A program made the translations under genes and the position numbers. Under the pieces are notes generated by a model. The model was not told where the DNA came from. It ran no database searches and saw only the letters and a program-made list of their open reading frames with translations. A stretch of 64,000 bases of DNA, taken from Haplodiscus bocki (lineage: Eukaryota). Of the stretch, positions 14,933-55,388 are shown one piece after another (within the stretch, counting starts at the first letter, position 1; the number at the start of each line of letters is the position of its first letter). The stretch is from assembly GCA_965655095.1 (NCBI GenBank), contig OZ296650.1, positions 109,864,001-109,928,000 of the forward strand. The letters run 5' to 3'.

Positions 14933-15352
14933 ACACAGAAGCGAAGCTCTGCTTCGCAACACTCGAGCCAACAGAATACTGGTGCACAAATCAACTACAT
15001 ATAAAATATTATTCAGGGGCCTGAACACTACGAATACTACTGACAACAATGTACATAAACCATAAACTCAGTTAATTCATCTACATTTATATACAAGAAA
15101 CACTATAAAATTTCATCACAAACAAAAAAATCATTACAAGCAACAATGGCACAGGCAGTAGAGCATGCGACTGCTGCGCGAAGTCCCATGTTCGAGCCTA
15201 GGACACCACCTCTTCTCTTTGCTCAAAATCTAGGAACTTGTGCGAGTTGTGAACGGCTCGGGGAAAAAATTCTATGATAAAAACTTCTTGATATCAAAAA
15301 TCTTTGATATCAAAAACTTTTTGATAAAACACTTGCTTGCGCGAGTGAGTGT
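14933..15352 (-). mobile_element. HINE-like element, family 2 (copy C), with a tRNA-derived module
   Basis: Hairpin GCGAAGC-tct-GCTTCGC plus aacactcgagc at the left end and acacttgcttgcgcgagtg at the right end. Internal 16-bp tandem (gatatcaaaaa...) at 15276-15330. Homologous to 497-882. Confidence 0.65.
15140..15210 (+). pseudogene. Degenerate tRNA-derived sequence (SINE-head-like)
   Basis: A-box-like TGGCACAGGCAGTAGAGC and B-box-like GTTCGAGCC at tRNA spacing. A second copy lies at 42250-42318. Confidence 0.6.
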
Positions 15353-44290: not shown

Positions 44291-45068
44291 GAGTTACCAG
44301 AAACTTTTTATTTGTGCAATCTCACCGCTTTTATGCTGGACCAATGGATCCTTTTTTATCTTAGTCCCCGCAAATTGGGGAAAAAGGATTCGAAATTTGT
44401 TATGCTTTCACTGGGGAACATTCAAAAAAGTTTGAATTTGCGCGACCTCAAAGCCAGTATGATGTGCCATAGGGTCTCGCTTGTACTCAAACGCAGCTTT
44501 GCTGCGTTTGGAAAGTTCGGAAAATATCGTACGAAAAAAAACATGAAAAAATGAACACTATAAGTACATCGTAAAATTGAAATTCTCCGAAGTCCTTAAA
44601 AAAACAATATCACCGTGTAGAGGCTATCTAAATTTTTTCACAACCTCTAAGTACCCAAAAGCCCTTACTCAAAATTGACACAACTATGCTTACATACATT
44701 TGATCGTTTTTCCTTAACCTTATCAAATTGGTTTTATCTCTACGTTAATTTTATACCTATTTCTTTTATTCGGCGCGTGTAAACAAGCCCGACAAGAGGC
44801 CTAATTTTTCGGTGTTTTTCTTCGAACAGGATGTATTCACAGATTTTGCTGATTCCGTCATTGGCCAATACGTAACCGCTTTCGCTTACACGTAATATAC
44901 CTGGTAAAAGGCACCTTATACCAAGAGTGAGCGTATGCTTATTCATACTAGTAATATACCATGCAGACTTTAGCAGTTACCGGCAAACCCAAAGTGAGCT
45001 TGCGAAAATGGTTCGGCGAGTTTCTGGAGAGGAAGAATTAAATGTTTGGCGAGCCTTAGTTTACCAAC

Positions 45069-45257
45069 CTGTTAGTGTTCCCAAAGCAATGGAGACGAGG
45101 AGTCCGCAGATGATGAGTTTGACACACAGCGAATTGGTGAGGTAAGACTCGAACGGGAAACAAACTAGAAAAAATCGGTCAACTGCAATCTCCATCAGAA
45201 GCGAATTTGACTGGGTGAACACCATGTAGAACACAATGTGGTAGAACATGCATACCC
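45069..45257 (-). CDS. Class A GPCR exon 3 (TM3, ICL2, TM4)
   Basis: Junctions tttttacag|GG...ACAG|gttggt; 189 nt, phase 1-1. Translates GVCMFYHIVFYMVFTQSNSLLMEIAVDRFFLVCFP..., with the TM3 Cys and a DRF variant of DRY. Confidence 0.9.
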
Positions 45258-45728
45258 CTGTAAAAACTAGAACCTACTTAGATATATTTGTTTCATGACG
45301 ACAGAAAAAAAACACTTAACAAATATCATCTATTTTTGCACAACCTAAAGGTTATTGCGACCAAACTTCCCAAGGAAAGCCAACAATAATTCAAAGTTGA
45401 TGAGGTAGTTTCGGCATGCAATAAACACTGTTATGGAATTCAGGACCAATACCGCCAACAACGGATCGACTTTTGCTTCTGGTCGCTTAACTTTACTACT
45501 TTTTAAAAGTTAACTTTGAAATTGTTTTCACATTGCTATCAGCTAAAAAAACTCGTTCAGAAGTGTGGCACAATAGCTTTTAGTTATGATTTGTAAAACG
45601 AAGCTTTCCTTCGAATGTTTAACTTACCTTTTCAAGACATGCTGCAAATGGAAAAGCTTTTTTGGAAATATACGTCACTGGCTGTCAGTGTCACCCCAGA
45701 GACCGGCTGACGATCTAATTATACTCAC

Positions 45729-52500: not shown

Positions 52501-53350
52501 CCAGCGAATTCTGAATCAAAAGTGCTCATTGAATGAAATCAATTTATGCAGCTTCAACTTTCACATTTGGCATCGATTTTGGACGTATCGAGAGAACTTC
52601 AATGTATCCGAATTTTTGTCCAAAATTTTTGAACAAGGAATGGACCCAACTAACTTTTGATAACCACTTGCATCTTCGTAATTATATTTATGAATAAATT
52701 CCATGATATGTTTGCATGTAACAAAAATTTTACGACGAGGATAATACCGAAATTTTCAGTGATACTCCCTGGTTTACGGCAAAATTTAGGCCACTAGAGG
52801 CATTCATGATAGCACCTTCAAAAATTCTGCTCTGTTCCTGATCTTATGAATTTAAATTGGACATATGTAAACTACTGTAGTTAATTACCAAATTTTACCA
52901 TTTTGACGTTTATGGCGGATAATGGAGTGTGCAATGTACCAATAACAAACTGAATGCAGTACCCAACCCCTGACGTAAGCAACAGAGCTGACGTTAATAC
53001 GCAGCATCTCACGTATACAATAACACTGATGAAACGAAGTTACAATTTTGACGTTACAACTAGGAGCTAGCTATGTTTGAAAAGGTCACGGGTGTACCTA
53101 TAATATCGAATACCTTGGCTTTGATTTTAAATATGAAAAGAGAATCTAAATATGGAAGGAGAATCATCCACTCACCGTGAGCGCTTTTTTGCAAATTAAA
53201 CTTTCCAATTTCAGAATTTGAACAAAATTGTACGATTTAAACACAAAATGAAACAAGAACAAAAAATGGCACTCGGAGAGCGCAGATCCCGCGAAAGCCT
53301 TTGATCTTTCCCTCGCCAAACAAACAAATAAACTGACAAACGAAAAATCT

Positions 53351-54857
53351 TGGCCACACAGAGGTTCGAACTCTCGACCCTCGCGTCTTTAGCACAATGA
53401 TCTTACCGACTGAGCTATAGCGCCGTACTAATTTGATTACGATTATCAGATTACTATTATATGATTGCTTTTATCAGATTAACAAAAAGTTTTGCACACA
53501 CAGAGGTTCGAACTCTCGACCCTCGGGTTTTTAGCACAATGCTCTTACGGACTGAGCTACAGGACCGTACTAATCTGATTAGTCTTATCAGATTACTATT
53601 GTCAGATTACTATTATCCTGGATCTGATTGAAACCTTGATCCAATCAGGATCTCCGGATAACTGTTATCAGGATCCAACAGGAGGTCCTGGATCGTAATG
53701 CAGTCGTTGATATACATCACCTCATATTTTGAGAAAATCTTCTAACAAACAAACAAACAAGCAAACAAACAAACAAACAGACAAACAAAAAAATTTATCC
53801 ACACATAGGTTCGAACTCTCAAACCTCGCGTTTTTAGCACAATGCTCTTACCGACTGAGCTATAGAGCCCTACTCATCTGATTACTATTATCAGATTAGT
53901 ATTATCACATTACTATTATCAGATTAACAAAAAAGTTTGGCCACACAGAGGTTCGAACTCTCGATCCTCGAGTTTTCAGCACAATGCTCTTAACGACTGA
54001 GCTATCGGGCCGCAGGTATCTGATTACTCTTATCAGATTACTATTGTCAGATTACTATTATACTGGACCTGATTGAAATCCTGATCCAATCAGGATCTCC
54101 GGATAACTGTTATCATGATCCAACAGGATATCCTGGATCGTAACCCAGTCGCTGATATACATCACCTCCTCTTTTGAGAAATCCTGCTAACGAGAAAACA
54201 AACAGACAAACAAAAAAATGTGGCCACACAGATGTTCGAACTCTCGACCCTCGCGTTTTTATCACAATGCTCTTACCGACTGCGCTATAGCGCCGTAATA
54301 ATCTGATTACTAGCATCAGATTACTATTGTCAGATTACTATTATCCTGGATCTGATTGAGATCCTGATCCAATCAGGATCTCCGGATAACTGTTATCAGG
54401 ATCCAACAGGATGTCCTGGATCGTAACCCAGTCGTTGATATACATTACCTCATATTTTGAGAAAATCTTCTAACAAACAAACAAACAAACAAAAAAATTT
54501 ATCCACACATAGGTTCGAACTCTCAAACCTCGCGTTTTTAGCACGATGCTCTTACCGACTGACCTATAGGGCCGTACTTATGTCATTACTATTATCAGAT
54601 TACTATTATCAGATTACTATTATCAGATTAACAAAAAGTTTTGGCCACACAGAGTTTCGAACTCTCGACCCTCCCGTTTTTAGCACAATGCTCTTACCGA
54701 CTGAGCTATAGCGCCGTACTCATTTGATTACGATTATCAGATTACTATTGTCAGATTGCTATTATCAGATTAACAAAAAGTTTTGGCAACACAGAGGTTC
54801 GAACTCTGGATCCTCGAGTTTTCAGCACTATGCTCTTAACGACTGAGCTATAGCGCC
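53351..54857 (-). pseudogene. Array of eight ~74-nt tRNA-derived units (tRNA-Ile-like body; anticodon position AAA or GAA)
   Basis: Copies at about 53351, 53494, 53797, 53938, 54221, 54501, 54642 and 54783. Consensus GGCGCTATAGCTCAGTCGGTAAGAGCATTGTGCTAAAAACGCGAGGGTCGAGAGTTCGAACCTCTGTGTGGCCA. D and anticodon stems pair, T stem 4/5, acceptor stem 5/7. A box, B box and downstream T-runs are present. Confidence 0.85.
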
Positions 54858-54910
54858 GTACTTCTCTGATTACTCTTATCAGATTACTTTTATCAGATTA
54901 CTATTATCGA
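53430..54910. repeat. 14-bp minisatellite (ATCAGATTACTATT)n, GATC-rich palindromic blocks and (CAAA)n interleaved with the tRNA-like units
   Basis: Two to three 14-mers flank each tRNA unit. GATC/hairpin blocks occur at ~53615-53740, 54060-54190 and 54343-54470. Confidence 0.9.
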
Positions 54911-55388
54911 GGAGCTGATTGAAATCCTGATCCAAAAATCCGACCAGTAGTTAATGACAAACAGTTATCCGGATCTCAGATCCGGATTTCAATCCGGATC
55001 ACTCTCAACTTTGAACTCGGTCTTCCTATGATCATTACCTCCCTACTCACCAAATTTCATCAAAATCCGACCAGTCGTTTTTGAGAAATCCTGCTAACAA
55101 ACAAACAAACAAACAGACAAACAGACACACGAAGGTGATTGCAATATCCCGCTTTTCGCGGGATAATGAAACAAATATGTCCCAAAATTCGAACAGAACG
55201 TTATTACTTTTTGTTTGAAAAAAAAACGGCTTTGTGAGACGAAATTTAAGGTTGCTTATTTTAAAAAATGAAAAATTAATGTCAAAGTTAAAGCGGCTGA
55301 TTCTGAGGTTCAAAAATCTTCTTAAGAGCATCACCATTTGATTATTCTAAAAATTGTCCTACTTTTTACAAAAAAAATATTTCCGAAC

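What the first reader, a model, noticed from the sequence alone, without database searches (positions are those of the whole stretch)
53252..55166. Rolling-circle-type non-autonomous element whose central array is eight Pol III tRNA-like genes
Seen in sequence: every structural hallmark of a HINE/DINE-1 (TT start, perfect 11-bp subTIRs, 5' short IR, GTTT/GTCT microsatellite, 3' stem-loop, T-rich end). These enclose eight tRNA-like units at spacings of about 142, 303, 142, 283, 279, 142 and 141 bp. Nearly all units keep an A box (TAGCTCAGTCGG) and B box (GTTCGAAC), and each has a T-run a few nt downstream. Established: HINEs carry central tandem repeats and capture DNA, while tRNA-derived repeats normally spread as retroposed SINEs. 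Inference: this is a DNA-transposon vehicle amplifying Pol III units, giving a mobile tRNA-like RNA cassette or portable TFIIIC/insulator array inside a GPCR intron, co-oriented with the gene.
Basis: partly seen in the sequence, partly recalled or inferred. Interest (0 to 1): 0.85.

Follow-up and report, generated by a model that had tools for sequence, protein, structure and literature searches.

The report
Rolling-circle transposon carrying tRNA-derived repeats
This is one copy of a young, roughly 1,500-copy non-autonomous rolling-circle (Helentron-type) DNA transposon whose internal tandem repeat was built from the host's own tRNA-Ile gene; it spreads thousands of tRNA-like units with intact-looking RNA polymerase III signals, but nobody has yet shown that they are transcribed.

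Summary
On the minus strand, window 53263-55166 is a 1,904-bp element. It starts with TT and has a perfect 11-bp subterminal inverted repeat, a 5' hairpin, a (GTCT/GTTT)n microsatellite and a short 3' stem-loop. It holds eight 74-nt tRNA-like units, each followed by a T-run.

It belongs to a family with about 1,500 termini in this 1.5-Gb genome. All 20 other full copies I fetched carry 5-16 such units. All 13 sampled places where the unit occurs lie inside this family, with 1 to 30 or more units, so I saw no free SINE.

Two independent sets of empty sites show precise insertion at a TT-containing site with no target-site duplication.

The unit is 68/74 identical to the genome's own tRNA-Ile(AAT) gene and shares its 3' terminator flank. 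That points to capture as DNA, not retroposition. The units are pseudo-tRNAs: the anticodon is AAA or GAA and the stems are decaying. Most still keep A and B boxes and a terminator.

Not shown: transcription (no RNA data available), any insulator role, or the autonomous partner (one unverified candidate).

Other first-stage notes of this scan flagged the same family on other DNA of this genome.

Verdict: a new variant of a known kind (HINE/DINE-1/Cg_HINE), of moderate interest.

The parts
53263..55166 (-). Whole element: one copy of the HINE family, 1,904 bp with 8 tRNA-like units.
   Evidence: Boundaries come from alignment to 20 other full copies and from loose ends of other copies' contigs at 53260/55166.
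55145..55166 (-). 5' terminus: TT followed by the hairpin TTATCCCGCGAAAAGCGGGATA. The left subTIR ATCCCGCGAAA is at 55154-55164 and its complementary short IR at 55146-55152.
   Evidence: DNA fold gives an 8-bp stem, z = -3.4. The 30-nt terminus pattern has 1,536 genomic hits against 0 for the control.
55096..55130 (-). Microsatellite (GTCT/GTTT)n.
   Evidence: TRF finds period 4. Its length varies between copies.
54858..55095 (-). Left-flank body, including a 14-bp minisatellite (GATAATAGTAATCT-like) at 54868-54908.
   Evidence: 96-99% identical in 40 genomic copies. The long spacers inside the array are diverged paralogs of it.
54784..54857 (-). tRNA-like unit 1 (anticodon position GAA).
   Evidence: Rfam tRNA 48.5 bits; ARAGORN.
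54642..54715 (-). tRNA-like unit 2 (AAA).
   Evidence: Rfam tRNA 32.4 bits.
54500..54573 (-). tRNA-like unit 3 (AAA).
   Evidence: Rfam tRNA 21.1 bits, below the gathering score.
54221..54294 (-). tRNA-like unit 4 (AAA).
   Evidence: BLAST match to unit 1 and read directly from the sequence. Not reported by Rfam at E <= 1.
53938..54011 (-). tRNA-like unit 5 (GAA).
   Evidence: Rfam tRNA 42.8 bits.
53796..53869 (-). tRNA-like unit 6 (AAA).
   Evidence: Rfam tRNA 26 bits.
53493..53566 (-). tRNA-like unit 7 (AAA).
   Evidence: Rfam tRNA 24 bits.
53351..53424 (-). tRNA-like unit 8 (AAA).
   Evidence: Rfam tRNA 31 bits; ARAGORN.
53567..53795 (-). Long spacer 1 (terminator T-run, microsatellite, LF-like body, minisatellite). 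Long spacers 2 and 3 lie at 54012-54220 and 54295-54499.
   Evidence: Alignment A1 to the left-flank body, mean column identity 70%.
53263..53350 (-). Right flank: short GTTT-rich stretch, right subTIR TTTCGCGGGAT (53286-53296), 3' stem-loop GCGCTC-TCC-GAGTGC (53269-53283), then CATTTT. The canonical terminal CTAG is missing in this copy.
   Evidence: The 30-nt 3' terminus pattern has 1,379 genomic hits against 0 for the control. All 20 of 20 other copies end ...GCCATTTTCTAG.
55369..55623 (-). Context: putative first exon of a rhodopsin-type GPCR, with an N-terminal tail carrying NxS/T sites and a TM1 with the motif GNSLV.
   Evidence: Open frame and motif seen. No Pfam hit on its own, so this is an inference.
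45064..45273 (-). Context: GPCR exon covering TM2-TM3 with a DRF motif.
   Evidence: Pfam 7tm_1, E = 8.8e-7, 29.1 bits, profile positions 56-118.

Best explanation
Window 53263-55166 (minus strand) is one copy of a young, high-copy family of non-autonomous Helentron-type rolling-circle transposons (a HINE, like Drosophila DINE-1 and oyster Cg_HINE).

Layout, 5' to 3':
- TT, then the 11-bp subTIR inside a hairpin.
- A (GTCT/GTTT)n microsatellite.
- A left-flank body of about 240 bp.
- A central array.
- An 88-bp right flank with the complementary subTIR, a small stem-loop and ...CATTTTCTAG.

Mobility (inferred from the family's architecture). A Rep/helicase encoded elsewhere in the genome recognises the two ends and moves the element as single-stranded DNA into a TT-containing site without duplicating the target.

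The central array. It is built from a module that started as a genomic copy of the host tRNA-Ile(AAT) gene together with its 3' terminator. The module was then multiplied in tandem in two forms. One is a 142-bp unit: tRNA plus 14-bp minisatellite. The other is a unit of about 280-305 bp that also re-duplicates the microsatellite and the left-flank body. The number of units changes between copies by gain and loss of these blocks. Some copies have grown into satellite-like arrays of at least 8 kb.

The units now. They are pseudo-tRNAs, useless for translation. Most still carry A box, B box and terminator, so many are probably able to bind TFIIIC and Pol III. That ability is a retained property of the captured gene. 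Nothing here shows that it is used by the element or the host.
For: Shown by tool results:
1. Family size. The 5' terminus has 1,536 hits, the 3' terminus 1,379 and the exact 19-nt hairpin 1,134. Controls gave 0.
2. The termini of 21 copies are 99.65% identical to their consensus.
3. All 20 other full copies carry 5-16 units in the element's orientation, with block spacings of 142, 279/283 and 303-319.
4. All 13 sampled genomic places holding the unit, including four apparent singletons, lie inside this family. Units per stretch run from 1 (a copy of about 530 bp) to 30 or more.
5. Empty sites. Five paralogs of the repeat that hosts copy L025 read ...GTTT^TCTG... uninterrupted. In a 1.33-kb tandem array, 6 units are filled and 2 are empty at 93-96% identity...GATAA[TTATCCC...CTAG]TTGTAG... 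There is no target-site duplication.
6. In 19 of 20 copies the element sits between T and T if it is read as T-ATCCC...CTAG-T.
7. The consensus of 404 units is 68/74 identical to genuine tRNA-Ile(AAT) genes of this genome and shares their AAACTTTT 3' flank. No CCA is encoded.
8. 93% of units have at least T4 within 20 nt downstream. The B-box core is intact in 81% and a strict A box in 58%.
9. The long spacers are paralogs of the left-flank body.
10. The genome encodes many Helitron-like Rep proteins with open frames up to 2,780 aa.

From the literature: the architecture matches the published definitions of HINE (PMC4067079) and Cg_HINE (PMC7492417).
Against: - No autonomous element with these termini was shown. 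Ten Rep loci of 3.5 kb hold no copy of the subTIR. None of the Rep clusters on contig C1 up to about 147 Mb has the exact hairpin within 100 kb. The single co-location is unverified: a 5' terminus at C1:147361954(+) and a 2,203-aa Rep frame 7.8 kb downstream. By my rough estimate it has about a 5% chance of being coincidence.
- The 3' stem-loop is weak: 6 bp with a G.T pair, and the region is no more stable than shuffles.
- This particular copy lacks the canonical terminal CTAG.
- The 20 full copies were the best BLAST hits, so they are biased towards recent, similar copies.
- Pairing of termini on C1 suggests many shorter copies of 340-1,000 bp. One copy of about 340 bp may have no tRNA unit at all. 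I could not fetch it.
Confidence: 0.85

Rival explanations
1. The units are active Pol III transcription units and/or TFIIIC-bound sites. That activity would matter: the family would be a mobile source of tRNA-like small RNAs or of portable insulator/boundary arrays, and would persist or affect genes (here a GPCR intron) because of it.
For: - A and B boxes and a T-run terminator are retained in most units.
- Variation is about half as frequent in the A box (5.2%) and B box (4.3%) as in the rest of the unit (8.0%) and the flanks (about 9.7%).
- tRNA-derived tandem repeats transcribed by Pol III are known in amphibians: Xenopus satellite 1 and Hy/Pol III, both listed in PMC9659126.
Against: - No RNA run holds the sequence, so there is no expression evidence at all.
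- The difference in conservation is small and was not tested against mutational bias.
- The stems decay freely: 592 pair-breaking against 182 pair-keeping single changes, and 9 compensatory against 9 non-compensatory doubles.
- The whole repeat, spacers included, is highly similar simply because the family is young.
Confidence: 0.25
2. The tRNA-like module helps rolling-circle transposition itself. As a strongly folding single-stranded DNA structure it might pause or terminate strand displacement, or favour tandem re-initiation. This would explain multi-head composites and array growth.
For: - Composites with several 5' heads and one 3' tail exist (L049, L050, L057).
- A similar idea was raised for the Arabidopsis tRNA-Cys cluster overlapping annotated Helitrons (PMC10701932).
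Against: - The cloverleaf is not maintained.
- As single-stranded DNA, the two units folded are only weakly to moderately more stable than shuffles (z = -1.3 and -2.4).
- Other HINE families carry unrelated central repeats (PMC7492417), so no special structure is needed.
Confidence: 0.05
3. The array is a one-off: a tRNA-derived SINE inserted into a HINE copy and was then duplicated locally, or it is a cluster of real tRNA genes that happens to lie between HINE-like ends.
For: tRNA-derived repeats normally spread as SINEs. The genome does have a genuine tandem tRNA-Ile array on contig C5.
Against: - All 20 other copies and all 13 sampled contexts show the units inside the family.
- No A-tail, no target-site duplication and no CCA.
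- The anticodon AAA/GAA on an Ile body and mismatched stems rule out working tRNA genes.
Confidence: 0.02

Closest known systems
HINEs and DINE-1 (non-autonomous Helentrons; Thomas, Vadnagara & Pritham 2014, PMC4067079)
   Same: - 11-15 bp subterminal inverted repeats starting 2-4 nt from the 5' end.
- A short IR forming a hairpin with the 5' subTIR.
- A microsatellite and central tandem repeats.
- A small palindrome near the 3' end.
- T-rich/TT insertion site without a target-site duplication.
- No coding capacity and high copy number.
   Different: The central repeat here is recognisably a host tRNA gene with promoter boxes and terminator. That paper does not contain the word tRNA at all. 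No autonomous partner was demonstrated here.
Cg_HINE elements of the Pacific oyster, which carry satellite-like central repeats (Vojvoda Zeljko et al. 2020, PMC7492417)
   Same: - Same module order: left flank with subTIR (11-12 bp), IR and a 4-nt microsatellite; a variable segment; tandem repeats always in the element's orientation; a right flank of about 60 bp with subTIR and palindrome.
- TT/oligo-T insertion with no target-site duplication.
- Array length varies.
- Repeats also occur as longer satellite-like arrays.
   Different: The oyster repeats (Cg170-type and others) have no reported tRNA origin; the word tRNA occurs 0 times in that paper. Here part of the array also re-duplicates the element's own left flank.
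tRNA-derived SINEs and SINE/tRNA-derived satellites (Xenopus satellite 1, Hy/Pol III; tabulated in PMC9659126)
   Same: tRNA-derived sequence with A and B boxes, present in thousands of copies and in tandem arrays.
   Different: Spread here is by a DNA (rolling-circle) vehicle. No free units, A-tails or target-site duplications were seen. The terminator flank of the source gene came along.
Arabidopsis tRNA-Cys cluster overlapping annotated Helitrons (PMC10701932)
   Same: tRNA genes repeated in tandem within sequence annotated as Helitron-family. Its authors note that Helitron capture of a non-coding RNA gene would be a first.
   Different: That case is a single locus, and Helitron prediction tools did not confirm an element. 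Here there is a dispersed family with about 1,500 termini, defined ends and empty sites.

Membership tests
HINE (non-autonomous Helentron) | Subterminal inverted repeats of at least 11 bp: the left one 2-4 nt from the 5' end, the right one about 38-60 nt from the 3' end. | tested here: met
   ATCCCGCGAAA starts at nt 3. Its perfect complement starts 38 nt before the canonical 3' end.
HINE (non-autonomous Helentron) | Short inverted repeat next to the 5' subTIR (DINE-1 type). | tested here: met
   8-bp stem hairpin, z = -3.4. Conserved in 1,134 exact genomic copies.
HINE (non-autonomous Helentron) | Small palindrome or stem-loop 8-35 nt from the 3' end. | tested here: inconclusive
   GCGCTC-TCC-GAGTGC lies 10 nt from the canonical end and is conserved in the family. 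It is only 6 bp with a G.T pair, and the region does not beat shuffles.
HINE (non-autonomous Helentron) | Insertion at a TT/T-rich site without a target-site duplication. | tested here: met
   Two independent sets of empty sites. T on both sides in 19 of 20 copies under the T...T reading.
HINE (non-autonomous Helentron) | Microsatellite and central tandem repeats; no coding capacity. | tested here: met
   TRF and spacing analysis. No meaningful open frame in the element.
HINE (non-autonomous Helentron) | An autonomous Helentron (Rep/helicase/nuclease) sharing the termini. | tested here: inconclusive
   Rep genes are abundant but none was linked to these ends.
Canonical Helitron | 5' TC, 3' CTRR, hairpin near the 3' end, insertion between A and T. 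| tested here: not met
   The 3' end is CTAG (fits CTRR). The 5' end is TT, subTIRs are present, and the target is best read as T^T.
tRNA-derived SINE | Dispersed single units with target-site duplications and a 3' tail (A-rich or LINE-derived), spread by retroposition. | tested here: not met
   13 of 13 sampled contexts lie inside the HINE family. Units are followed by the gene's own T-run, not a tail.
Functional tRNA gene (Ile or Phe) | Canonical cloverleaf, a used anticodon, and a score above the tRNA model threshold. | tested here: not met
   Anticodon AAA/GAA on an Ile-type body. Pairs 5-69 and 50-66 are essentially never formed (0% and 5% of distinct units). Only 4 of 8 units in the window reach Rfam's gathering score.
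MITE (cut-and-paste) | Terminal inverted repeats and a target-site duplication. | tested here: not met
   The repeats are subterminal and there is no target-site duplication.

The most novel reading that the evidence does not exclude
A Helitron-superfamily (Helentron-type) DNA transposon captured a complete Pol III gene (tRNA-Ile with its terminator) and has spread roughly 6,000 promoter-bearing copies by rolling-circle transposition rather than retroposition. A substantial share of these units would be bound by TFIIIC and/or transcribed, making the family a mobile source of Pol III sites inside genes. This would be the first documented non-coding RNA gene captured and amplified genome-wide by this superfamily.
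Probability: 0.3. Interest if true: 0.7.

Novelty: new variant of a known kind. Interest (0 to 1): 0.5.

Why it matters
tRNA-derived repeats are the textbook product of retroposition (SINEs). Here the same kind of sequence has been multiplied to thousands of copies by a DNA rolling-circle vehicle, with the source gene, its captured terminator, the ends of the vehicle and clean empty sites all identifiable.

Three things follow.
- It gives a concrete case for the open question of whether Helitron-family elements capture non-coding RNA genes. A 2023 paper (PMC10701932) says such a case would be the first.
- It shows how a captured gene becomes the seed of a satellite-like repeat.
- It supplies about 6,000 natural, dispersed A-box/B-box sites, on which TFIIIC binding, Pol III transcription and boundary effects within Pol II genes could be tested.

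If the units prove silent, the element remains an ordinary selfish HINE with an unusual cargo.

Tried and rejected
- One-off SINE insertion followed by local duplication: rejected.
- Working tRNA genes: rejected.
- Selection on the cloverleaf: not seen.
- Autonomous partner:
  - Ten Rep loci hold no subTIR.
  - The exact hairpin is absent near the C1 Rep clusters.
I did not try to read more letters by other routes.
  - A 'genus' search is not possible for this genome.
- Expression: no RNA run holds the stretch. The four runs found are contig sets from one study. They only confirm single-copy flanks, very high repeat depth and the element's boundaries. No listed contig joins the two flanks, so no empty allele was seen.
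- Organism identification: runs are coded and one Atlas look-up was uninformative. The species remains unknown to me.
- The other first-stage note on this window, a 'second HINE-like family with a tRNA-derived module' at 14933-15352, gave no tRNA match at E <= 1.
- Literature: no paper in the library holds both Helentron and polymerase III. The key HINE papers do not mention tRNA. Repbase and Dfam could not be searched.
Full report
**What is in the window**

Read on the minus strand, window 53263-55166 has the following layout:
- It begins TTATCCCGCGAAAAGCGGGATA. That is TT, then the 11-bp motif ATCCCGCGAAA (55154-55164), folded back on a 7-nt complement into an 8-bp hairpin (-9.6 kcal/mol, z = -3.4, beaten by 0 of 200 shuffles).
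- Next comes a (GTCT/GTTT)n microsatellite (55096-55130).
- Next is a body of about 240 bp that ends in a 14-bp minisatellite.
- Then come eight 74-nt tRNA-like units at spacings 142, 142, 279, 283, 142, 303 and 142.
- The last 88 bp hold the perfect complement of the 11-mer (53286-53296), a small stem-loop GCGCTC-TCC-GAGTGC (53269-53283), and CATTTT.

Rfam's tRNA model scores seven of the units at 21-48.5 bits; four reach the gathering score. ARAGORN calls two. In the window, the A-box string is exact in 3 of 8 units and one base off in the rest. GTTCGAAC is exact in 7 of 8. Every unit is followed by T5-T7. Two corrections apply: the strand is minus, and about 11 nt at the 3' boundary belong to the flank.

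**It is a family, and the tRNA units belong to it**

The genome (G000) is 1.5 Gb. The pattern counts are:
- 30-nt 5' terminus, up to 2 mismatches: 1,536 hits.
- 30-nt 3' terminus: 1,379 hits.
- Exact 19-nt hairpin: 1,134 hits.
- Reversed-pattern controls: 0 in each case.

I fetched 20 other complete copies.
- All begin with TTA(T/C)CCCGCG, and all 20 end ...GCCATTTTCTAG.
- Their lengths run from 1,180 to 3,483 bp.
- All carry 5-16 tRNA-like units in the element's orientation, built from the same 142-, 279/283- and 303-319-bp blocks.
- The first 41 and last 70 nt are 99.65% identical to their consensus, so the burst is recent.

These 20 were the best BLAST hits and are therefore biased towards copies like the window's. 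As a less biased test, I searched the 3' part of the unit. It gave 4,082 hits at up to 2 mismatches. I then fetched 13 places along contig C1, including four apparent singletons. All 13 lie inside this family, with the 5' terminus, the left-flank body and/or the right flank present. Unit numbers range from one (a copy of about 530 bp, L045) to 30 or more (L051, 6.5 kb) and to arrays running beyond 8 kb (L055).

About 70% of my 386 sampled units match the search pattern, so the assembly holds roughly 5,900 units. I saw no free unit, A-tail or target-site duplication.

**How it inserts**

Two independent sets of empty sites were found.
- Copy L025 sits in another repeat family. Five paralogs of that repeat (78-81% identical) run straight through the junction...GTTT^TCTG.... 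The only gap in the alignment equals CTAG, which shows that CTAG is the element's last four bases.
- On C1:109.36 Mb a 1.33-kb tandem repeat has six units filled with a one-unit copy and two empty units, 93-96% identical across the junction. Empty reads ...GCAGTGATAATTGTAGTTGG.... Filled reads ...GATAA[TTATCCC...CATTTTCTAG]TTGTAG....

Nothing is duplicated or lost at the target. Because the element starts with T and is followed by T, the cut can be placed one base over. Read as T-ATCCC...CTAG-T, it lies between T and T in 19 of 20 copies.

This behaviour, together with the subterminal repeats, the 5' hairpin, the microsatellite, the central repeats and the short 3' palindrome, matches the published definition of HINE/DINE-1 (PMC4067079). 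The module order is the same as in oyster Cg_HINEs (PMC7492417). Canonical Helitron criteria (5' TC, A^T target) and MITE criteria (terminal repeats, target-site duplication) are not met.

**Where the units came from**

A pattern for the D arm and anticodon arm of tRNA-Ile(AAT) found genuine genes. Among them is a tandem array on C5:79.527-79.586 Mb, with neighbours mostly about 378 or 757 bp apart.
- The consensus of 404 HINE units is 68/74 identical to these genes.
- It shares the 3' flank AAACTTTT.
- No CCA is encoded.

Capture of the gene as genomic DNA, terminator included, is therefore the simplest origin. Retroposition of a mature tRNA is not.

The six consensus differences are:
- The anticodon changes from AAT to AAA. 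GAA occurs in about 17% of units, and a few units keep AAT.
- Pair 50-66 is broken.
- Pair 5-69 is turned from a wobble into a mismatch.
- Pairs 6-68 and 29-43 are weakened to wobbles.
- One D-loop base is changed.

Across 260 distinct unit sequences, single changes in stems break pairs three times as often as they keep them (592 against 182). Double changes are compensatory no more often than not (9 against 9). The units are pseudo-tRNAs.

**How the array is built**

The long spacers (53567-53795, 54012-54220, 54295-54499) align with the element's own left flank: microsatellite, TAGCAGGATTTCTCAAAA, the TTGGATCAGGATTTCAATCAG block and the minisatellite (alignment A1). The central array is thus a tandem multiplication of almost the whole interior of a minimal element (left-flank body plus one tRNA module), together with a shorter 142-bp derivative.

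Copies differ by whole blocks. Composites with several 5' heads and a single tail also occur (L049, L050, L057). Unequal exchange or slippage, and rolling-circle re-initiation or read-through, are the likely causes. This is inference.

**What is not shown**

*Transcription.* 93% of units have at least T4 within 20 nt. The B-box core survives in 81% and a strict A box in 58%. The boxes vary about half as much as the rest (4-5% against 8-10%). This is a small effect that I did not test against mutational bias. No RNA run holds the sequence. The four runs found are contig sets of one study and show only single-copy flanks, very high repeat depth and the element's boundaries. Pol III activity, TFIIIC binding and any insulator role remain hypotheses.

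*Partner.* The genome has 147 Helitron_like_N matches with open frames up to 2,780 aa. An earlier follow-up of this scan (s1-354045) describes 17-kb Helentron-like arrays with a GIY-YIG nuclease at C3:134 Mb, where I also see Rep hits. None of ten Rep loci contains the subTIR. None of the C1 Rep clusters has the exact hairpin within 100 kb.

One 5' terminus, C1:147361954(+), lies 7.8 kb upstream of a 2,203-aa Rep frame on the same strand, from a family of about 20 copies. By my rough estimate, coincidence has a probability near 0.05. I did not try to obtain those letters another way.

**Context**

A frame at 55369-55623 (minus) encodes an N-terminal tail with NxS/T sites and a TM1 with GNSLV. 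A frame at 45064-45273 (minus) matches 7tm_1 positions 56-118 (E = 8.8e-7) with a DRF motif. The first exon is inferred from its motif only.

**Known or new**

HINEs that carry and spread tandem repeats are well known. In the searchable library:
- The defining papers never mention tRNA.
- No paper combines Helentron with polymerase III.
- A 2023 study of an Arabidopsis tRNA-Cys cluster states that Helitron capture of a non-coding RNA gene would be the first example, and it could not confirm a Helitron there (PMC10701932).

Repbase and Dfam could not be consulted, and the species is unknown to me, so a prior database entry cannot be excluded. Other first-stage notes of this scan flag the same family in other windows of this genome. 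They are not independent evidence.

**Verdict**

A well-supported new variant of a known kind: a HINE whose central repeat is a captured tRNA-Ile gene. Interest is moderate. It would rise if Pol III/TFIIIC occupancy is shown.

Noticed in passing
G000 C5:79,527,729-79,585,542 (loci L070, L071): A large tandem array of genuine tRNA-Ile(AAT) genes. At least 65 exact pattern hits, with neighbours mostly about 378 or 757 bp apart. It includes sequence variants and one copy that ARAGORN reads as anticodon ATT. This is the likely source gene family of the HINE unit.
   Followed up: partly
L054 = G000 C1:109,362,000-109,371,999 (the array continues to about 109.39 Mb): A 1.33-kb tandem repeat in which 6 of 8 units carry a one-unit HINE copy (497-527 bp, differing in microsatellite length) and 2 units are empty. 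The element was evidently amplified along with its host repeat.
   Followed up: partly
G000 C1:133,393,691-133,415,828 (partly in L055): Unit hits of the tRNA-like repeat spread over about 22 kb. In the 10 kb that was read, units and long spacers run without a break behind a single right flank. This looks like a HINE core growing into satellite DNA.
   Followed up: partly
L049, L050, L057 (G000 C1:36.17, 50.23 and 23.72 Mb): Composite arrays with several 5' heads (terminus plus left flank) but only one 3' tail. Each extra head directly follows a tRNA unit plus microsatellite.
   Followed up: no
G000 C3:133.75-134.31 Mb; C9:18.6-19.0 Mb; C1:134.8-135.0 Mb and others: Clusters of Helitron-like Rep genes with open frames of 1,800-2,780 aa, repeated about every 15 kb.
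   Followed up: no
G000 C1:147,361,954 (+) and C1:147,369,799-147,370,407 (+) (L066): A HINE 5' terminus with its full left flank lies 7.8 kb upstream of a 2,203-aa Rep open frame on the same strand. It is a candidate autonomous partner, not verified.
   Followed up: partly
window 14933-15352: A second HINE-like element, noted by another first-stage note as carrying a tRNA-derived module. It holds a B-box-like GTTCGAGCC, but Rfam finds no tRNA match at E <= 1.
   Followed up: partly
window 55369-55623 (-) and 45064-45273 (-): Exons of a rhodopsin-type GPCR: TM1 with GNSLV, and TM2-TM3 with DRF and a 7tm_1 match. The HINE lies in the intron between them.
   Followed up: partly
L025:2243-2501 and paralogs L073-L077: The flank of HINE copy L025 belongs to another interspersed repeat family with about 1,000 candidate copies at 77-81% identity. 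It is unclassified.
   Followed up: no
window 53263 (3' end of the element): The window's copy ends ...GCCATTTT and runs straight into TTGTTC..., lacking the CTAG present in 20 of 20 other copies. The octamer TTGTTTCA occurs just outside both ends (directly before the 5' end, 10 nt after the 3' end). This may be coincidence.
   Followed up: no
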